A DNA stretch of 61,622 bases, counting the filler, from Sluysia triapertura (lineage: Eukaryota), in the NCBI GenBank assembly GCA_046118255.1. It is 5 parts of 5 records of this genome, joined end to end, with 100 filler letters (N's around TTAATTAATTAA, not from the genome) between each part and the next. Parts side by side here need not be neighbours in the genome. Positions count along the whole stretch, not along the records: positions 1 to 12,601 come from JBJNIA010095445.1; 4 more parts are not named here. One strand, written 5' to 3'. The translations under genes were made by a program, and so were the position numbers. Below the pieces are notes generated by a model that made no database searches, was not told where the DNA came from, and saw nothing but the letters and a program-made list of their open reading frames with translations. Below, in pieces: positions 540-12,601 of the stretch (position 1 is the first letter of the stretch; each line of letters begins with the position of its first letter).

Positions 540-1400
540 ATGTTTTAGTTCTCACATATAAGTTGTCTGACTATGATGAAGCTGCATATTTGGATATTTT
601 GTATTTTTAAAAATCTCAACTTAAATGGCTGTAGAACTTTGCAATTCCCTTTTAAATTTCCCGTTTTTCAACAAAATAATCTAATTTTTAGCTAAAGATA
701 TTCCTTGCAGATCAACTAAATCTAAAAATGAGTTGATGAAATATTATAAGCGTCTTTGCAATCATCGGCATAGTTGCGAGGGGAAATGTTTAGTAGCTCA
801 TTTAAAGTTCTTCAAATAATTCACAGACCTCATCAATGTTCACATCTGAAAACCCATCACCTTCAAAATTAGAAACAACGGCTATTAGTTTTTTATATTC
901 ATCCTCCTGAGATGGGTTCTTCTTTCTGAAACATCTGATGCAACAAGGGTGTCCAACATGCATTAAGTATAGACTGTTTTAATTCTTTGCAAGCTAAATC
1001 TAAAACTGTGACACAGTCTAAAATAGAATACTCTTTCCAAGCTCGGATAAGCGTTAAATTTTTATCTTTTTCCAGTCTTTTGAAAATTATTTGAAATGCC
1101 AATCGTACGTAATATGCTTTAAGTGTTGAAATAAAACCTTGATCTATTGGTTGAATCAATGATATACAATTTTAAGGAAAAAATGCAATTTTTACATTAG
1201 GATGATCTAATTTTATACTGTGGCAGCAAGCATTATCAACAAGCAATTAAAGCTTAGATTTTTTTCTTAAGAAACTTCTGGAACAAAAAAATTATATAAC
1301 CAGTTTTCAAATAGATTCCCCATTATCCAGCCATTTTTATTTTCTCGTCAAAAGACTGGTAAGTTAGACTTATCTAGGTTTTTCATTGCTCTGGGATTAT
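540..1400 (-). mobile_element. Decayed pogo/Tigger (DDE_1) transposase remnant
   Basis: ORF 899-1159 begins IQPIDQGFISTLKAYY, matching the pogo QP.DQG.I...K..Y motif. Upstream broken frames give NPRAMKNLDKSNLPVF and ENKNGWIM..LFENW. Stops and frameshifts present; boundaries approximate. Confidence 0.8.
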
Positions 1401-3037
1401 ATAAATATAGGGTTCTATATTAAATTTAAAACAAAATTAGCATCACAATTTTATACAAATCAAGAGTCTATGCTTTTATTAATTTAATAGTCTGAATGAA
1501 GATTATATAATTTATTGTTATTTTTCACATTTTACCTTTTAATTTTAAAAAAAATAAAAAAGCCTATCAATTTCATTTACAAATAATGGAATGATACTGT
1601 CAGAGTAAATAACTGCTTTTTTATGTAGCCATTAATCTAAAGCAGCCTTTAATTTAATGCAATTAGATCCAGCTTAGAAATCTTCTTGCGTAACTAATTA
1701 AGAATAAATTCTTTAAATCGTGTAATATTGAAACACTGTTATAAAATTTGCAGATTTTGCATCGTGCTAAACAGTCTTAAATACACATGTTTTGTGATAC
1801 TGATGATTTTATAATACTAATCAGCAATATTCGATAAAAGATAGTATCAACATCATTAAAAATTATTTTGGTATCATTGGTAGTTGAATATTTTTTCGGT
1901 GGATTTACAATATGAATGATATCCATGTTTCTAGTATATGTTTTTGCGATGATTTTGTATAATGAGATGGAAACTTATTCATAGAAGTTAGGATATATTA
2001 TTGAACCCTTAGAGGCATAACCATGGTAAATATGGAACTAACATGGGTAGGTAACACAATATTATAACGTAATTTTACATAAATTATATAGTTGGTTTTC
2101 GGATTGAATAGCGGATTAAATATATTGAAATGCTAATCATTTTCTGATTATGTGACCATTAAAATTGAATTTGATTACTATTAAATTAATATTAAATAAA
2201 CTCCAATATTTAAAATGGTCATAAATATTGGTTACTTGGTTTTTAATATTAATTTAATGTAAGCGTAGAACACTGTTGTTTTTAATCAATAAATTCTAAA
2301 TCATTCAGTCTAGCATATCATCAAAAAATTTTGTAGTTGCGACTAAGGTATGCAGTCTTTTAAAACATTGTTTTTATGCATAGAAATAGTATATTTTGTC
2401 ACATTTTTTGTCACAATTATTTTTTGCTAGGCTAACAAATATTCCATCTTCACATGGTACTATAGCAGAAAGTCCTGACATAATTGATTCTTGAAGTGGC
2501 TGTAAATCGCTTAAGGTATTTTACATTACTGCTTATTACATCTAGATAAATAATCTGATTTCCGTTTTATTTTAACTAGCTCGAAATTTTGGAAAAGCTT
2601 AAAAGTTTGAAAATTTAAAGCAATTTGTTTCCACATGTGTTTTACTATCAATATCGCTTACGAAATTAATATTAGAATTATTTCGTATTAAATAAAAAAG
2701 TATCATTATCATTCGTATATAATTTTAAAATTAAATTGTAAATTAGAATGTTGTGTTATTAATTTAATTGGTAGCCTCGTTCATTATATTTGTTAAAATT
2801 CTGAATAGTCATGTGCTATAAACTAAACATTAAAGTATCATCGTACATGTTCTTAACGTACATATAGCTTTTCCAATCACTGATGTCTTTCCAAATTTAT
2901 CTAATGTACAACCAATATTTTACTGCTATGAAATTAACAATTTTTTGTTAATCATTTACTATTAAATACTTTATCAACAAATTGTAACAAATAGATTTTA
3001 ATTATTTTTTTCATTTGTTCAGTTTATTATAATTTAG

Positions 3038-3467
3038 ATGGTGGAAATCAAATTCTTTATGTGCACCTACTTCTGGTGCAACGGAAATTTCTTCAAATTC
3101 TCTTACTGTTACAGAATTAGCGGGAGTATTTTTGGTACTTATTTGTGGTCTAGTTATATCCGTGTTGGTTCTTTTTGTTAAAATTATAATATTGAAATGC
3201 AAACCACATCTTCATTTACAAAAGTGCTGCCGAAATTTATTCAAGAATTTACCTTTAACTTCTGAAGAACCAATTCCCAAATATACTCCAAAAAGCACTT
3301 TAAATAGAAATGTAACCAGTCCAAATAATACTGGAACATTCCCATCAACCTCAAGCACACCACCATCACCAAATCTTATTTATGATATGAATTTTATGAC
3401 ATCACATGATCAAGTTGTAACTAGATTATTACCAAATACAAATCCTCAAAATGAAACCAAAATCTAA
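3038..3467 (+). CDS. Ionotropic glutamate receptor, terminal exon (end of S2, M4 helix, cytoplasmic tail)
   Basis: Acceptor ttag at 3034-3037, then phase-2 frame WWKSNSLCAPTSGATEISSNSLTVTELAGVFLVLICGLVISVLVLFVK, matching the iGluR pattern KWW...C...L....AGVF..L..GL. Stop at 3465-3467. Upstream exons not recognised. Confidence 0.8.
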
Positions 3468-4939
3468 AACATTGTTTGTTTGGAATATATTTCTTGTTAA
3501 TTTTCTGTATTTTATGTTGTTTATGTTGTAGATTATCTTATGAAAATTTGAATTTTTATGATAATAAATTTATTCATTCAGAAACAATCCAAAATTATCG
3601 CTAATAGTAAGTATTATTTTTTTACATTGTACTCATTTCGAAATTCGTGCTACTTAGTTTTTTTTAATGGAAAATAATATTAATGGAAGAAATTGTAACA
3701 AACAAACCTGAAACCTTGTTTTACATACTTCTTTGAAACATTTAATTCTTTTTAATCACTTTATGGATATTTATTTAACAAGATCGTTTCATTTAATTAT
3801 TTTAATACCTGGATCGAAACGATTTGTGTGTCAGCTGTAAGGATGGAAGTAACAATTTAAATATCACTAAGTGAGCTTTTATTCTTTCTAAAGCAAAACT
3901 TCAAAGAAGATATTTAAATAAATTTTGAAACAATTTTTATTAAACGAATTTTTACCTTTAATTCGATTTTAATATTATTTTTTACTTAATACTTTAATAA
4001 TTTGTTTAATAAAAATTTCAACTTTTTAATGTCGAAAAATATTTATATTTATAAATGTTTTCAATCAATTAAAACAATAAATTTTTCGATTTCTAATTTT
4101 CTAGATCGTAAACAGTTGTAAAATTTTGATCTCTAAATGATGTAACTCGTAAACGTGTTATAAATATATATTCAATCAATTAAATCACCTAATAAATCGT
4201 TCAACTAATGTTTGCCGTACCACGTGTAATTACGACGCTTAGAAATTAATATTAATAATTGTGCCGAGTGGATTTGCGTTGTGTGACTTTTATTATGCAT
4301 TGGGGCCAATAAGATATAACTGTAAAAGTTTTTCGATTTCTGTATTGTAATTTTACTACAGCCAGTTATGTTTTTTCTACATTACAGAATTTCTTACTAA
4401 GGCTAAAATAATTCTTCATTTTTTATAATGATTTTTATTATTATAGTTAACATTTTCCTACATAGATTATGTTTCCATGATTATACAAAATTATGTAATA
4501 ATTTATTTAATAATAATTTAATAATAATTATGTAATAATTTATACAAAATTATGTAATAATTTATTTTACCGTTTCCATGATGATTTAATAATGTACGTA
4601 GTTTTGATTTGACTTTTTAGAAATTTTTTAGTTTTTTAACTATTTATTGTATTTTTGATTATTATATTTTAATAATTTAATTTATTTTCGAATAATTAAT
4701 TCAAATAAGTGTCAAAGTATATATCTACTTTACAAATTATTAAGAATGTAGTATTAAAATTTTTATTTGAACTTCTTGAAACATTTTTATGTTGAAATCT
4801 CTTGAAAATGATCATTCATTCATTATTGTTTCCACTGAAGCTATTTTAATGCTTTTTAGAAGCTTGGATATCGAAAGAGTTATTTTAAATTTATTAAGAT
4901 TTTATCAAATATTATAAATTGTTAGTGAAAGTTTCGTAA

Positions 4940-5250: not shown

Positions 5251-5864
5251 CAATAAAGTTAACATAAATAAAGTTAAGTATCCCAATTAAATGTTTTAAC
5301 CAATAAATGTTAAATTACATATCATGCAAATACTAATTAACATTTAACGTTATANNNNNNNNNNNNNNNNNNNNNNNNNNNNNNNNNNNNNNNNNNNNNN
5401 NNNNNNNNNNNNNNNNNNNNNNNNNNNNNNNNNNNNNNNNNNNNNNNNNNNNNNNNNNNNNNNNNNNNNNNNNNNNNNNNNNNNNNNNNNNNNNNNNATT
5501 AATATTATAATTACTATTATAATTGTCAGATTTTGCTAGTTTCTCCTGACACCAAAGTGTGGAGGGCAAGAAATATTTTTATTTATAAAACTTAAAATTA
5601 TTTTTCTTTTTCTTTTTAATTTTATTAAAAATTATCTTAACTAAATAACTTACAACTAAATTACAATGTTTTAAAATTATCAATTTTATCTTTAACAACA
5701 TAGGCTTAAGGCCTGTAACAATTAAAAAAAACAAAACTAATAAATTTAATATACCGGCAAAATGTGTTACTGTGTAAAAAATAAAATTTAAACAACAATA
5801 TAATAAATACATAACTGTAACTTCAAATGTAAAATACTGTATAGTGTTTTCAGTTCGTTGCAGA

Positions 5865-6173: not shown

Positions 6174-6852
6174 CTACAATCATCAAAATGAACGATTTGG
6201 TTATTATTAACTGACACAATTTAAAAATATTAATAAATTACTTTATTTCAATGTTAGAAACATAAAAGTGAATTTTAAAATCGTAAATATAAAGAAACGA
6301 TAATAAGAATGCTTTTTTGCTTATATAGTTAAATGAATTATATTTTTGTAAACATTTTCTTTGCATTTTTATTATATAAAAAACGTACTAATGTATGATA
6401 AATGTCGCAGAGGATACGCAAGCAAATTTTTATCAGTTGTTTTCAGGAATTAACAAAATTGAAGAATTAACTAAAGAATCTAACTTTGTGGTTAGAAGAT
6501 ATAAAAATTTCATAATTATGTATGGCTTAAGCGTAAAAATAAGACGATGTGATGACCAAAATTTTAAAAGATAAAATAAAAATTAATGAAGTAAAAAAGC
6601 TTTATTGTCTTAAAAGGTAAAGTTAAATTACATAATTTAACTTGATTTCTGCATTTGATAAAAAACATTAAAGATTTTCTAAATAATATGAAGTTTTCCA
6701 GTCTAACTACCACAATACAACTGAAAACACAACAGCTCCAGCGTAACATCAAAGAAATGCAGTGTTGTAATAAATAATTAAATAATTGTATTCCAAGAAA
6801 TAACTTATTTATTAACTTTCAATAATTTAAAGCATTAATTAAAACAAATTAC

Positions 6853-7050
6853 TTTTGGATTGTCCAATTTAACAAAATAAGAAAAGACAATTAAAGCATC
6901 GTCAAGATAATTTCTAGCTCGAAGTTTCTTCAAATAACTCACAACAATTAAATCTTTTGTTGGTTTATAATGACGATGACTTAACCAGGTTGCATTTTTT
7001 AAAAGAGCACGATTATACAAATCCTTTCCCCACCTGTCGGTTAGATTTGT
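6853..7050 (-). CDS. Candidate internal exon (66 codons) of unidentified gene
   Basis: tttcag acceptor and gtaatt donor, phase 0/0, open frame TNLTDRWGKDLYNRALLKNATWLSHRHYKP...DNPK. Confidence 0.55.
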
Positions 7051-7289
7051 CTGAAATTAATACTAAATATTAAATATATTCAATTTCAAATCAATATCAA
7101 AACATTTTCTGGAAACGTTATAAAATTCTTGAAATAATTCTTTTTATCGAATGTGTCAAAATTTACTCTTAAAATTATTATCATTATTTAATCGATTTTT
7201 CCACAATTAAATCTTAAAAATTGTATAAAATTATCTACCATTTAATTATTTACACCATATCATCAATTATAGATAGAATGAAAAAATCA

Positions 7290-7455
7290 AAAATGGATTG
7301 CAAGTGCTGTGGTTTTCTAACACTTAATTTACGGCAAAATATTTTTGAGCAAGATTCAGTTGCCGTAAGCGTCTTACAACGTATCGTTGACGCTTCTGTA
7401 ACTAAAAGATCACTTAAAAAAATAACTAACAAATTATTCGTAGAGCGTCTTACAA
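7290..7455 (-). repeat. Dispersed repeat, probable LTR fragment (second copy at 45545-45720)
   Basis: Minus strand CTCAAAAATATTTTGCCGTA-AA-TTAAGTGTTAGAAAA recurs at about 45653-45688 on +; the copy starts TGTAAGAC. Confidence 0.65.
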
Positions 7456-7901
7456 TTACTAAATAATTAAATAACATAAAGTATCATTCTTTTATTAAAA
7501 ATACAAAAAATTCAAATAGTTCAGAAATACAATGAAATAATAGATTACAAGAATAAAAATAATTAATTCACAGATTAAAGCTCCGTGAACCTTTAATCAG
7601 GTGTTATAAGAATTTACGTGGAGTTTATCCCTCAATATGTCGGGACTTAAAAAATCTTAATAAATTAACATAAAATTTGAGTGGAGTTTGATTTTAACTT
7701 CAAAAGTTAATATCTCCCTTAACAAATATATAAATTAACAAAAATTTGTTCGATGAAAAATTACGATGAATTGCGACGATTACTAAATTCACGATTATCT
7801 TGAATTTCGCATAAAATTACCAAATTTTGTGATTACCAAAATGACGATTTTCATTGCAAGGTGCTAGTATATATACTAGTCATCATCCAATGAAAATCGA
7901 T

Positions 7902-7941
7902 AGAATGTTCTAAAATATTCTAGAACATTCCAGAAGCTTCT
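7902..7941. promoter_or_regulatory. Heat-shock element array (8 alternating nGAAn/nTTCn units)
   Basis: aGAAt gTTCt aAAAt aTTCt aGAAc aTTCc aGAAg cTTCt: 7 of 8 units perfect. Function untested. Confidence 0.6.
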
Positions 7942-8813
7942 ATTCTATTTTTAGAAGCTTATTTTTTGTTTTAGAAAATTTATTTTCTTTTTTGGAAAAT
8001 AATTATTTTTTAAGTAATTTTAAAAATTATAAATGGTTTTAAGATGTTTTATATGCTTTTAATTAATATTTTAAATATTTTTGAATAAGTTTAAGGTGTC
8101 ATTTTAACATTTTCGAATTATTTTATAGGGTTGCGATGACAACTTAACACAAAGATCAAATAAGATAGATGAAGAATGTTCTCAGAATCATAATTTGAAA
8201 CTGATGATGAATTAGATTACTTTTTTTGAAAATTATCATTAAATCGATAACGAACTAACTCATCAAACAGTTATGATGAAGAAGAATATGAGTAGAATAT
8301 GAGTAGAAGATTTTGTTGACAGAGTTTTAGGATAAAGATAATGAAGAAAACAATGAAAGACAAAATACTGAAATCGAAGCAAGACGACAAAACACCTTCA
8401 AACATTTATACAAAGTAGAACATTATGAAGGAAGCATTTCATACACACATTCTATAAAAAATGAAAGATTTTAAAAAATACTCGTAAGAAACACATGCAA
8501 TTCACCACTAAATAAAAATGTATAACTCATATATAAATAATGCAGTGGAATTTTGTAAAATAATTGCAAAAATAAATTGACACTAATTTAAAAATTGGCA
8601 TTTGTCATACTATTTCTAAAACAGAATGAACTTTTTAAATAATTCATAATTTTTCTCCTTTTTATTGTAGATTTTTGTAACTTATCACTAAATAACTATC
8701 ACTGCATATTCTGTATAAATTTTTATATCTTACGACATTAATTTTAGTTTCCATGAAATATTTAATTTATAATAAATTTTCAATTAAAAAAGAAAAATCT
8801 AAAAAAATCTTAC

Positions 8814-9203
8814 TTTTTCATAAATCTTAAAAGTTTTCATTTGTTCTTGAGCTATATATAAAATGGTAAAACGTCTTACAACTTTAGTGTATAATTCCAT
8901 TTCATCCGATGACGATTCAATTTGATTAATATCCATATCAATTTCATATATGTAAACTAAATAATTCAACAAATGTATAAATAATTTTATATTATTTGTA
9001 TACAAAGGAATATTTAAAGTTATTTCATTTACTGCATATTTTCCACTTTGAGCTTGTAACTCTTTAAATATTGATTGTTCATCTACAGCTATAGAATAAT
9101 TAGTTTTAGCTACCAGCAATGATGTTAAACCCTGAGTACTTGAAACCGATTCTTTATTTGGTGTTAAATAACGAAGCGTTTCTGTATCTGTATCCAAGCA
9201 ATT
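8814..9203 (-). CDS. Candidate internal exon (130 codons) of unidentified gene
   Basis: ttag acceptor and gtaaga donor, phase 0/0, fully open NCLDTDTETLRYL...KIYEK in very AT-rich DNA. Confidence 0.5.
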
Positions 9204-10580
9204 CTAATAACATAAACAATATATTATTAATAATGTTTTTGGAAAACTATAACGTATCCCACAAAAAGTGTCGGACATGAACAATAGAAAATTAGTTACG
9301 ATAACAAACCTATAATGCTATATCAAACAATATATTTCTTTCACTAGAGTTTTTCAAACAGAGTTAAAATATAATTAATCAAATGATCATCAACTTTCTG
9401 AAGCAGCTCAGAATGTTCTCTTTTTGACAAGCATTAAATGAAGTATTAACTCGTCAAAATTCAAATATCCTTTCATAATTAACAGTGATGCCATCATACG
9501 AAATTTAATGACAAAATTTTACAACTATTTGGAAGCCATGTTCTTTCATTTAGATGATTTAGGGCAAATCTCATCATAAGCATAAACATTAAATCATGCA
9601 TTTTTTCTGGTCAGTTCCTCAACTATTTCCAATGCAAAGAACATTTAATGGTTTTTCATAAGAAAATTAAATGTCAATTAAACATGCATATGCAAAATTT
9701 ATAATTGTATAATCCAAATTGTATAATATGATTACTAAATCTGACCTTGAAAATGGACATTTTTAATGAACATACATTATTCATCAGTGAATAGAAACAA
9801 AGCCTGTATGAAAACGTTTGAGTTTTTTTTATTTTATATTAAATTTTTTAAAACGTATATATCCGTTTGTACTATTAATATTTCATATTCTTTACGACTT
9901 AAATGTCATCAAAAATGTGCCCTTTAGACTGTAGAACATTTTGATGAAATGTTAAATTTTAAATGTTAAAAATTATGAAATAATGACCAAATAAATAAAA
10001 ATGTTTCACTTAGGGTATTAATCATTTTAAGTTTTTGTTTCTCATTCCACCCATTTGATATTATTTGATATTTTGAGATATATTATTACTTGTTGTATGA
10101 TATCACTTTATGTTATTTATTTAAAACATTTATTATTTCCATTTTTATTTATGTTAAAAAGACATTAAAACTTAATATTTTTTCAACCTACAACTAGGTG
10201 GTTTTCGGTATTTTTACTCACAACGAACTCTTAATTAAATTGATGGTGATTCTTTATTATCAAAGTAAAAAATTATCAAAGCAATTCTCCTTTTCCGCAC
10301 AATATCCATGAGAATGAAAATATGTTAAATTAAGAATGTTCTTTGTGACTAAAACTCGTTTAAATTTTAAATGAAATTCATAAATAATCAACTAAAGGTT
10401 GCACAGCTTCTAATTATGTGTCCCAACAGAAAAATACGAGAGATAATTAGGCTATCTTTTAGAAATTGTCTATCATAATTCTCTACTTTGTAACTTTCTT
10501 TTTCGATAGATGAAAATAGGACAATCCTCCAAAAGCGGCCCTAGTGTAATATTTGTTAAGTAAAAATTAATATAAGACCT

Positions 10581-10604: not shown

Positions 10605-10825
10605 GTTAATACTAATAATAATATTCTAATTATAATTATAATTATAAATCCATATATTCAACAATGAATTATTGTGACACTCAGAATATAATACAAATTA
10701 GAAATCAATCCAGTACATTATATTTATATACTGTTTAATTACTGAATGACACAATATCTTTATTTAATTTCAATTAATTCGCTTAGTTGGTATTACTGCT
10801 TACACAAGTATTTTGGATTCAATTT

Positions 10826-10917
10826 AATAATAATGATTATTATTACTATTATAATTACAATAATAATAATCACAATAATAATTACAATATTAAAAATAAT
10901 CATAATCATAACAATAT

Positions 10918-10970
<53 letters not shown>
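10826..10970. repeat. (AAT)n microsatellite, degenerate grading to pure
   Basis: Directly visible; explains the poly-I and poly-N ORFs. Confidence 0.95.
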
Positions 10971-10971
<1 letters not shown>

Positions 10972-11077
10972 TATGTTCCATTATTTTTATTTGATTATTA
11001 TTTTATTTTTTCTTCGTAATATTTTATTATTACGTTTCTAATGTATTGTTTGTTCTTATGTGTAACTTTTTCTGTTT

Positions 11078-11638: not shown

Positions 11639-12543
11639 TATGTTGTAAGGTTTTTTTATTTGAAATTGATAATAATTAATAAAGCTAAGAAATTAGATTT
11701 CGAAAGTAGCATATTTTTGATGTTATATATTTATGTGACACGTTAGTATATTTAGGAATTATGTTTGATGCTGAAGGATGGTGTGATGATGGAAATGTTG
11801 GAAATGAACTATTGTTAAGCAACTGGATTTTATCGAATTTGATTTAGTCTCGTTTATGTTACTTAAAAATTTTGAGATGTGAGACTGATTATTTATATTA
11901 TGTATTCATGAAAAAATTCTTGGTATGAATTAAAATATGACTTTATATTCTCATACCATAAATTTTCGTTTATATCTCAATGTACATTATATAAGAATCT
12001 ATATTCATTCATTTCTTTGTTAAGTGAATTTAATCTCAGTTTTATAACTTTCATCATGTTTGATCTTAAACTTTAGAATTGCTCTTTTTTACTTTTTATT
12101 ATTTATTGATTTCATGGAAATATAATTCAGTTTCGAATTTCGGTTGAGATTTATTTCAATCTCAATAAGAATCGAGGAAAGTTTATTTCAAACCCCATCA
12201 CATACATTAATTAAATTAATTGTATTTGATATATGGCTCAATCTCATAAACTTTATGCTACTGGGATCTAGATTTACCCGAAACTTGTTAAGACTAAAAT
12301 GATAGAATAACGCATAAAAACTTACGATTGCTTCTAAGTACTACGGAAAATTTTCATTGTGTTTAAATACCTAAACATTAACTAAAACACAAGAAATTAT
12401 TGTTTATTGCAAACATTAGCTTCTGAAAAAGTACCTTCGGATTGCATTTTATTGATAACATTTATTAAATGTGGCGAAAAAATTCCCAACTTTTAGGTTT
12501 TTTGAATTTAACCGGGAATTACCAATGTAAGCAGATAATATGC

Positions 12544-12601
<58 letters not shown>
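12544..12601. repeat. (AGT)n microsatellite at contig end
   Basis: Directly visible. Confidence 0.95.

What the first reader, a model, noticed from the sequence alone, without database searches (positions are those of the whole stretch)
7845..7941. Eight-unit heat-shock element array fused to a 55-bp palindrome, probably transposon-borne
Seen: CGATTTTCATTG (7845-7856) and CAATGAAAATCG (7888-7899) flank the perfect palindrome CTAGTATATATACTAG (7864-7879), and eight in-phase alternating nGAAn/nTTCn units follow at once (7 perfect). Known: three units bind one HSF trimer, longer arrays bind cooperatively, and Helitron-borne HSE clusters rewire heat-shock genes in Caenorhabditis. Inference: this is a mobile HSF-binding cassette. 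It lies between candidate exons of a minus-strand gene and just upstream of a decayed acidic coding-like tract (about 8130-8400), and no chaperone gene is visible nearby.
Basis: partly seen in the sequence, partly recalled or inferred. Interest (0 to 1): 0.7.

Follow-up and report, generated by a model that had tools for sequence, protein, structure and literature searches.

The report
Heat-shock elements inside an abundant repeat
The eight-unit heat-shock-factor binding array is real, but it is one decaying copy of an 850-base mobile repeat with LTR-like ends, present in thousands of copies in this AT-rich, probably animal, genome; the repeat carries what reads like a complete heat-shock promoter, a known trick of transposons seen here in a new family.

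Summary
Observation confirmed. Positions 7903-7940 hold eight in-phase GAA/TTC units, seven of them perfect. Directly upstream lies the 55-bp inverted repeat 7845-7899.

Both sit inside an interspersed repeat, window 7305-8149 (845 bp). The repeat has sharp ends, 5'-TGCTGTGG...CCTAACA-3', and no terminal inverted repeats. Exact 4-bp target-site duplications flank 12 of 26 copies where both flanks could be read. The genome holds thousands of copies. They supply about 90% of its 1587 perfect six-unit HSE arrays.

It is not a Helitron. The ends are of the integrase type, so a solo LTR is the best fit. However, 100 left and 100 right flanks all differ, and no internal gag-pol part was found.

Two subfamilies differ throughout the middle of the element but share the palindrome and HSE core at 89-97% identity. 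Within individual copies the GAA/TTC bases decay like the spacers.

On the minus strand the array lies at about -98 to -61, a TATA box at about -33, and an initiator-like site at 7842. This is heat-shock promoter geometry, but it is inferred only. HSF binding and heat induction could not be tested because no RNA runs were available.

Verdict: a new member of a known kind (ONSEN, Macrostomum LTRs, Caenorhabditis Helitrons).

The parts
7305..8149 (-). One complete copy (845 bp) of a high-copy interspersed repeat with LTR-like ends (5'-TGCTGTGG...CTTAACA-3' on the + strand). The strand is given as the predicted direction of its promoter.
   Evidence: Copies align from 7305 to 8149 and diverge sharply beyond those points. 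First-look searches found 3824, 2989 and 1684 candidates. The 5'-end 20-mer occurs 544 times and the 3'-end 12-mer about 2300 times, against 0-70 for reversed controls.
7301..7304 (.). Left target-site duplication, CAAG, degenerate in this copy
   Evidence: The partner at 8150-8153 reads CAAA (3 of 4 match). Other copies have exact 4-bp duplications.
8150..8153 (.). Right target-site duplication, CAAA
7305..7404 (.). Conserved terminal block of about 100 bp, shared by both subfamilies. It contains an imperfect stem, GTTACAG...CTGTAAC.
   Evidence: Best hits are 88-92% identical. Read depth is about 50,000 against 1,000-3,500 in the middle of the element. Alignment A1. Covariation in the stem is not significant.
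7845..7899 (.). 55-bp inverted repeat: 12-bp arms at 7845-7856 and 7888-7899 around CTAGTATATATACTAG (7864-7879)
   Evidence: I5; z = -6.2. The arms are kept in 53-60 of 60 copies.
7868..7875 (-). TATA box on the minus strand (TATATAAA in most copies, TATATATA here), in the loop of the inverted repeat
   Evidence: Read directly from the sequence. Each position is kept in at least 55 of 60 copies. Its function is inferred.
7838..7846 (-). Initiator-like site on the minus strand (GTCATTTTG here, CGCCATTTT in most copies). The predicted start A is at 7842, 33 bp downstream of the first T of the TATA box.
   Evidence: Sequence reading. Inference from core-promoter consensus sequences; no RNA data.
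7903..7940 (.). Eight-unit in-phase array of GAA/TTC units (heat-shock element), 7 perfect; five contiguous perfect units at 7918-7940
   Evidence: Genome-wide there are 1587 perfect six-unit arrays against 0 for the reversed control, and about 45 of the first 50 carry this family's spacer bases. Subfamily-2 copies are 92-97% identical here to the window copy.
7941..8005 (.). T-rich conserved tail of the core, with further out-of-phase GAA/TTC motifs (for example GAA at 7954-7956)
   Evidence: 82-89% identity across subfamilies.
8129..8149 (.). Subterminal hairpin (GGTTG...CAACT here, GGTTGT-GATG-ACAACC in most copies) followed by the terminal TAACA
   Evidence: Subfamily 2 has GGTC...GACC at the same place, one compensatory change.

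Best explanation
The array and the palindrome are the conserved regulatory core of a high-copy repeat of about 0.85 kb. Its ends and target duplications are those left by a retroviral-type integrase, so it is most likely a solo LTR of an old LTR retrotransposon family. Window 7305-8149 is one old insertion, about 10-20% diverged from its relatives. Read on the minus strand, the core has the layout of a heat-shock promoter: eight HSE units at about -98 to -61, a TATA box at about -33, and an initiator-like site at 7842. The proposed mechanism is as follows. On heat or proteotoxic stress, HSF trimers bind the array cooperatively; eight units can hold two to three trimers. They then drive transcription leftwards from about 7842 through the 7305 end. 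In active elements this would have made retrotransposition stress-inducible. As a by-product it scattered thousands of potential HSF sites through the genome. Shown here: the motifs, the element boundaries, the target duplications, the copy number, the sharing of the core between subfamilies, and an HSF gene in the genome. Inferred: the LTR nature, the direction of the promoter, HSF binding and heat induction.
For: Motifs are present and non-random. Boundaries are sharp at 7305 and 8149 in about 40 copies. The termini are TG...CA. Exact 4-bp duplications flank 7 of 17 copies and 5 of 9 copies (paired by contig), against about 1% expected by chance. The unit has no terminal inverted repeats, which fits asymmetric LTR ends and not a cut-and-paste transposon. 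Copy number: 544 to about 2300 exact terminus matches and 1587 perfect six-unit arrays against 0 for the control. Summed read depth is 200,000-312,000 over 7813-8014, against 20-70 in the unique flanks. A second subfamily keeps the ends and the core (89-97% identity) while the middle is only 47-57% identical. On the minus strand the TATA box and initiator-like site are spaced 33 bp apart, and the array ends 28 bp upstream of the TATA box. An HSF DNA-binding domain is encoded in the genome at 81 bits. 53 of 61 copies keep at least 3 contiguous perfect units. There is precedent for HSEs in LTR promoters that confer heat induction: PMC12801592 (Macrostomum) and PMC3907296 (ONSEN).
Against: No paired LTRs, primer-binding site, polypurine tract or gag-pol part were found. 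All 100 right flanks and all 100 left flanks differ. The polypurine search found 1 hit. The TGG search found only an unrelated repeat. So 'solo LTR' rests on the ends alone. No RNA runs exist for this organism in the index, so promoter activity, its direction and heat induction are untested. Within copies the GAA/TTC bases are no better kept than the spacers, so individual copies show no sign of selection for HSF binding. In a genome with 24% G+C, TATA-like and initiator-like strings arise easily. The samples used to measure core conservation were partly chosen on the core itself.
Confidence: 0.55

Rival explanations
1. The 0.85-kb unit is itself the whole mobile element. On this view it is non-autonomous and is moved in trans, either by a DDE transposase or integrase that makes 4-bp duplications (for example the Ginger or Sola superfamilies, recalled from memory) or by an LTR-retrotransposon integrase acting on a single-LTR-like template. 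The HSE core would be a passenger or a promoter for the element's own transcript.
For: Each of 200 sampled flanks is unique. Paired ends on the same contig give units of 449-928 bp and never a longer form. Thousands of uniform short copies is the usual pattern for non-autonomous elements.
Against: The unit has no terminal inverted repeats, and cut-and-paste transposases normally need them. Asymmetric TG...CA ends are the signature of LTRs. Old LTR families can consist almost entirely of solo LTRs.
Confidence: 0.28
2. The GAA/TTC array is a slipped tandem repeat of a 10-bp unit (TTCTAGAANN). It would have no HSF role, serving another factor or no function at all, and its resemblance to an HSE would be incidental.
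For: The array is a 10-bp periodic repeat (I2 and I16). Variants with six rather than eight units are common in the genome, which is what slippage would produce. GAA/TTC bases are not better kept than spacers within copies. No binding or expression data are available.
Against: The 2-bp spacing and alternating orientation over eight units is exactly the canonical HSE and differs from the 3-bp spacing of STAT-type sites. The array lies at promoter distance from a TATA box. It is the best-kept segment between subfamilies, at 92-97% identity. The reversed control pattern has 0 genomic hits.
Confidence: 0.2
3. A Helitron-borne HSE cluster, as in Caenorhabditis.
For: A short hairpin lies just inside one end. 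HSE clusters are known in Helitrons (PMC6927752).
Against: 4-bp target duplications are present. The ends are TG...CA, not TC...CTRR. The flanking bases are not A and T.
Confidence: 0.02
4. A host heat-shock gene promoter or locus-specific enhancer at this place in the genome.
For: None beyond the motif itself.
Against: The same sequence occurs thousands of times with different flanks. No chaperone or other Pfam domain lies nearby. The element shows no similarity to six hsp70 loci of the genome.
Confidence: 0.02

Closest known systems
HSE-bearing Ty3/Mdg4 LTR retrotransposons of the flatworm Macrostomum lignano (PMC12801592)
   Same: An animal genome, with canonical HSEs upstream of the start site in an LTR promoter. 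In that system the HSEs are necessary for more than 250-fold heat induction.
   Different: Those families have 4-20 copies, one to four HSE motifs per LTR, and known gag-pol bodies. Here there are thousands of copies, one contiguous eight-unit array, no internal part found, and no expression data.
ONSEN / ATCOPIA78 of Arabidopsis (PMC3907296, PMC13602373)
   Same: HSEs in an LTR recruit the host heat-shock factor to activate the element.
   Different: ONSEN is a plant Ty1/copia element with few, full-length copies and experimentally shown HSF binding. Here the genome is probably an animal's, the unit looks like a solo LTR, and nothing has been tested.
HSE-rich Helitrons of Caenorhabditis (PMC6927752)
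   Same: One transposon family supplies most of the genome's dense HSE clusters. Here about 90% of the 1587 perfect six-unit arrays come from this family. There is the same potential to rewire the heat-shock response.
   Different: The transposon class differs: here there are target duplications, TG...CA ends and no Helitron termini. The array here is a single fixed block next to a TATA box, not a variable tandem cluster.
Drosophila-type heat-shock gene promoters (hsp70), from my own knowledge
   Same: Multi-unit HSEs lie within about 100 bp upstream of a TATA box at about -30, with an initiator at +1.
   Different: This is not a chaperone gene promoter, and it shows no similarity to the hsp70 loci of this genome. 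Those loci show only 2-3-unit HSE-like motifs in the 400 bp upstream of the ATG, by my reading of the sequences printed.
Dictyostelium DIRS-1 terminal repeats with heat-shock promoter elements (own knowledge, not checked here)
   Same: A retroelement terminal repeat that carries a heat-shock promoter.
   Different: DIRS elements use a tyrosine recombinase and make no target duplications. Here there are 4-bp duplications.

Membership tests
Canonical heat-shock element (HSF binding site) | At least three contiguous inverted nGAAn units in 5-bp phase | tested here: met
   Eight units at 7903-7940, seven perfect and five contiguous perfect.
Canonical heat-shock element (HSF binding site) | The organism encodes an HSF | tested here: met
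   PF00447 match at 81 bits in G000.
Canonical heat-shock element (HSF binding site) | HSF binds it, and nearby transcription is heat-inducible | not testable with these tools
   No RNA run holds the locus. No ChIP data are available.
Helitron | 5'-TC and 3'-CTRR termini, insertion between A and T, no target-site duplication | tested here: not met
   The ends are TGCTGTGG...CCTAACA. 4-bp duplications flank 12 of 26 copies. Flanking bases vary.
Helitron | Hairpin a few bases inside the 3' end | tested here: met
   GGTTGT-GATG-ACAACC lies 5 nt from the end. This feature is not diagnostic on its own.
LTR of an LTR retrotransposon (solo LTR) | 5'-TG...CA-3' termini with a short imperfect inverted repeat | tested here: met
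   TGCTGTGG against the reverse complement TGTTAGG, matching at about 6 of 8 positions. TG and CA are kept in nearly all copies.
LTR of an LTR retrotransposon (solo LTR) | Target-site duplication of fixed length, 4-6 bp | tested here: met
   Exactly 4 bp, exact in 12 of 26 copies, against about 1% expected by chance.
LTR of an LTR retrotransposon (solo LTR) | Some copies occur as pairs flanking a primer-binding site, gag-pol and a polypurine tract | tested here: inconclusive
   None was seen in 100 left flanks, 100 right flanks and about 60 loci, nor in the polypurine and TGG pattern searches.
LTR of an LTR retrotransposon (solo LTR) | Internal promoter (U3) and polyadenylation signal (R) | tested here: inconclusive
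   On the minus strand there is a TATA box at 7875-7868, an initiator-like site at 7842, and AATAAA at 7496-7491. These are motifs only, with no RNA evidence.
Cut-and-paste DNA transposon / MITE | Terminal inverted repeats | tested here: not met
   No inverted repeat joins the two ends.
TRIM (terminal-repeat retrotransposon in miniature) | Two direct terminal repeats within the unit | tested here: not met
   Only one weak 26-nt direct repeat (81% identity). By eye in the alignment its similarity looks weaker in most other copies.
SINE | Head derived from a pol III gene, an A-rich or simple-repeat tail, and target duplications of variable length | tested here: not met
   No Rfam or tRNA match. 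The end is CCTAACA. The duplication is fixed at 4 bp.

The most novel reading that the evidence does not exclude
The 0.85-kb unit is not a recombination remnant. It would be a self-contained, single-LTR-like non-autonomous retroelement: a heat-shock promoter plus the two integrase recognition ends and little else. It would be copied in trans by an LTR-retrotransposon's machinery under stress. That would explain thousands of copies without any internal part, and it would have seeded the genome with most of its strong HSF sites.
Probability: 0.12. Interest if true: 0.75.

Novelty: new member of a known kind. Interest (0 to 1): 0.45.

Why it matters
If the core is a working heat-shock promoter, this family would be a third independent class of transposon known to hijack HSF, alongside plant copia elements and flatworm Ty3 elements on one hand and nematode Helitrons on the other. 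It would also be by far the highest in copy number. Thousands of strong, cooperative HSF sites could soak up HSF, prime nearby genes for heat induction, and tie bursts of transposition to thermal stress. This gives a concrete system for asking how a stress regulon is rewired by a repeat. As it stands, the finding is a sequence-level prediction with no expression data.

Tried and rejected
- **Helitron:** rejected on the termini and the target duplications.
- **Full-length LTR element:** I searched with a 10-purine tract joined to the 5' end (1 hit), with TGG within 4 nt after the 3' end, and by reading 100 flanks on each side. The one recurring flank turned out to be an unrelated repeat that shares only ACAACCTAACA.
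- **TRIM or MITE:** no terminal direct or inverted repeats.
- **SINE, tRNA or known RNA:** nothing found.
- **Capture of a host hsp70 promoter:** no similarity to six hsp70 loci.
- **Conserved RNA or DNA stem in the 5' block:** RNAalifold predicts none, and covariation is not significant.
- **Genes in the window:** only a DDE_1 remnant. The two large minus-strand ORFs have no Pfam hit, and one of them is not on record as a called gene.
- **RNA evidence:** no RNA runs exist. The reads laid were DNA contigs only.
- **Empty-site allele:** no precise 7304/8150 joint was listed.
- **Metagenome scan for the core:** 0 hits.
- **Organism:** withheld by the tools. HSP70 looks metazoan.

Full report
**1. 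The observation**

The 12-nt arms CGATTTTCATTG (7845-7856) and CAATGAAAATCG (7888-7899) enclose CTAGTATATATACTAG (7864-7879). From 7903 to 7940 there are eight trinucleotides in strict 5-bp phase: GAA, TTC, AAA, TTC, GAA, TTC, GAA, TTC. A six-unit pattern with at most one mismatch matches only here in the window and in none of 200 shuffles. Folded as single-stranded DNA, the inverted repeat gives -14.7 kcal/mol against -3.6 for shuffles, z = -6.2.

**2. The feature lies inside a repeat**

A search of the window's own genome with 7750-8480 gave 3824 first-look candidates. The genome is 619 Mb in 263,945 contigs, and the window is about 24% G+C. The 40 candidates that were scored were all 80-87% identical over query positions 20-400 only.

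Extending the query showed that copies align from window 7305 to 8149 and lose all similarity outside those points. The unit is 845 bp here and 449-928 bp elsewhere. It begins TGCTGTGG and ends CCTAACA (CTTAACA in this copy).

Exact 4-bp direct repeats flank 7 of 17 full copies: GTAC, ATAT, AATT, TAAA, GTAA, GATA and CATG. I also paired left and right flanks from the genome-wide pattern lists by contig. This gave 5 exact duplications in 9 further copies: ATAA, AAAG, ACAA, GTAT and CTAG. The chance of a 4-bp match at this base composition is about 1%. The rest can be explained by decay, since copies differ pairwise by 13-27%. The window copy has CAAG on the left and CAAA on the right. The duplication is 4 bp and not 5.

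**3. Abundance**

| Pattern | Genomic matches | Reversed control |
|---|---|---|
| 5'-end 20-mer | 544 | 0 |
| 5'-end 13-mer plus flank | 2090 | 32 |
| 3'-end 12-mer plus flank | 2304 | 70 |

Given the divergence between copies, the true copy number is probably several thousand to about ten thousand. That figure is an inference.

In the DNA run that holds the locus, unique flanks have a summed contig depth of 20-70. The element's 5' 100 bp reach about 50,000, the middle 1,300-3,500, and 7813-8014 reach 200,000-312,000. These sums are not copy numbers. They do show independently that the palindrome and HSE block is the most widely shared part.

Two other coded organisms' runs hold short contigs 85-95% similar to these blocks.

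The genome has 1587 perfect six-unit arrays and none of the reversed control. About 45 of the first 50 listed carry this family's spacer bases. A six-unit variant that lacks one 10-bp unit is common.

**4. What kind of element**

It is not a Helitron. Target duplications are present, the ends are TG...CA rather than TC...CTRR, and the flanking bases vary.

It is not a cut-and-paste transposon or MITE in the usual sense, and not a TRIM. No inverted or direct repeat joins the two ends.

It is not a SINE. There is no Rfam or tRNA match, no tail, and the duplication has a fixed length.

Asymmetric TG...CA ends with a fixed 4-bp duplication are what a retroviral-type integrase leaves behind. A solo LTR is therefore the best fit.

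The weak point is that I found no internal part. All 100 listed right flanks and all 100 listed left flanks differ. A polypurine tract joined to the 5' end occurs once. The only recurring TGG-type flank belongs to an unrelated repeat that shares just ACAACCTAACA. The open frames in about 60 flanking loci showed no obvious retroelement-sized coding region; they were not scanned against Pfam.

So if full-length elements survive, they are under a few percent of copies. The alternative is that the unit moves on its own in trans.

**5. Subfamilies and conservation**

A second subfamily (L045, L046, L047, L058, L060, L069) has the same first 95 bp or so, the same core, and the same hairpin-plus-CCTAACA end. 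Its middle is essentially unalignable with the first subfamily.

| Segment | Identity of subfamily-2 copies to the window copy |
|---|---|
| 7405-7838 (middle) | 47-57%, one truncated copy 30% |
| 7305-7404 (5' end) | 53-72% |
| 7839-7902 (palindrome) | 89-94% |
| 7903-7940 (HSE array) | 92-97% |
| 7941-8005 (T-rich tail) | 82-89% |

These copies were picked by similarity to 7836-8012, so the contrast between core and flank is inflated. The read-depth profile agrees with it, however.

Within copies there is no extra conservation of the GAA/TTC bases. They differ from the majority state at 7.4% of cells against 5.5% for spacers. Among copies chosen on 7769-8149, the array (82% pairwise identity) is no better kept than the 3' part (83-88%).

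I do not accept that criterion, because dispersed transposon copies decay neutrally whatever their founders needed. What the result does show is that most copies, this one included, are not under selection for HSF binding.

53 of 61 copies still keep at least three contiguous perfect units, and this copy keeps five. The perfect inner palindrome is private to this copy: 57 of 60 others have T at 7869. AAA in unit 3 is the commonest state, in 45 of 60 copies.

**6. How it most likely works (inference)**

Read on the minus strand, the array is followed 28 bp later by TATATAAA in most copies (TATATATA here; + strand 7875 down to 7868). This lies in the loop of the inverted repeat. Thirty-three bp after the first T of the TATA box comes an initiator-like site. 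It reads GTCATTTTG in this copy, which fits the arthropod TCAKTY consensus. It reads CGCCATTTT in most copies, which fits YYANWYY.

That places the eight units at about -98 to -61, the TATA box at about -33, and the start at 7842. This is the geometry of classical heat-shock promoters, as I know it for Drosophila hsp70.

On the + strand, no TATA box follows the array within 60 bp. The TATAAAT at 8028 is AATAAA-like in most copies.

I therefore predict that HSF drives transcription leftwards through 7305. A minus-strand AATAAA at 7496-7491, kept in most copies by eye in the alignment, could mark the R region. In so AT-rich a genome this is weak evidence.

An HSF DNA-binding domain is encoded in the genome. 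By my reading of the sequences printed, the genome's intronless hsp70 genes show only 2-3-unit HSE-like motifs upstream of the ATG; the script found no perfect three-unit HSE within 800 bp upstream. These loci show no similarity to the element, so the core is not a recent capture of one of them.

No RNA run holds the locus. Binding, direction and induction are all untested.

**7. Context**

The element ends at 8149, so the 'acidic tract' at about 8130-8400 lies almost wholly in flanking DNA at unique depth and has no frame of 50 aa or more. The large minus-strand ORFs on either side have no Pfam match and lie in moderately repeated DNA. The only domain in the window is a DDE_1 (pogo-like) transposase remnant at 902-1159, minus strand. 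The organism is withheld. Its HSP70 is closest to metazoan clusters.

**8. Comparison with what is known**

Transposon-borne HSEs are established in three systems. ONSEN LTRs in Arabidopsis are one (PMC3907296). Ty3/Mdg4 LTR families in Macrostomum are another: they have one to four HSEs and 4-20 copies, and mutating the HSEs abolishes heat induction (PMC12801592). Helitrons in Caenorhabditis supply most of the HSEs there (PMC6927752).

This family works like the first two, as a promoter in an LTR-like unit. Its genomic consequence resembles the third, since one family holds most of the dense arrays. It differs in copy number, in having one contiguous eight-unit array, and in having no known coding partner.

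I file it as a new member of a known kind. The only route to something more novel is the single-unit retroelement reading, which I put at about 12%.

The majority states given above are per-position counts for short motifs only.

Noticed in passing
window 902-1159 (-): Remnant of a pogo/Tigger-type DDE_1 transposase (PF03184, E = 1.4e-6, C-terminal part of the domain only). It abuts a second short ORF at 802-963.
   Followed up: partly
window 8129-8149, and L045/L047/L058/L060 at the same place: The subterminal hairpin reads GGTTGT...ACAACC in subfamily 1 and GGTC...GACC in subfamily 2. That is one compensatory change, which hints that the hairpin itself matters for the element.
   Followed up: partly
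window 7358-7400; alignment A1: An imperfect 12-bp stem (GTTACAG-T-AAGCG / CGCTT-CTGTAAC) lies in the conserved 5' block. Subfamily 2 has GCTACAG/CTGTAGC. Covariation is not significant (47-53 of 500 shuffles reach the observed values), and RNAalifold predicts no consensus structure.
   Followed up: yes
window 7825-7846, and other copies: Many copies carry one or two AAGATGGCGAC / AAAATGGCGAT motifs, which look like YY1/Pho binding sites, just downstream of the predicted minus-strand start. The window copy lacks one 15-bp unit.
   Followed up: no
G000:C5:13516-13543, C1453:8534-8561, C2439:4046-4073, C528:1140-1167: Perfect six-unit HSE arrays whose spacer bases differ from this family's. They are candidates for genuine heat-shock gene promoters or for a second HSE-bearing repeat. 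They could not be fetched.
   Followed up: no
window 8520-9226 and 6500-7300: The flanks of the element are themselves moderately repeated (summed depth 100-466 and 40-105, against about 20 for unique DNA). This includes the 132-aa ORF at 8799-9197 (-), which has no Pfam match.
   Followed up: partly
window about 5380-5520; 10746-11041; 12540-12601: A run of N (an assembly gap, left untouched), a long AT-rich trinucleotide-type simple repeat, and a serine-codon-like simple repeat at the edge of the piece.
   Followed up: no
L077-L082: An unrelated repeat family shares the 11-mer ACAACCTAACA and continues into protein-kinase-like coding sequence. It turned up as a false lead in the search for a primer-binding site.
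   Followed up: partly
L032:1690-1727; L018:1955-2125; L019:306-548: Copies of the element lie next to or near other copies, some of them inverted. This suggests nested or clustered insertion.
   Followed up: no
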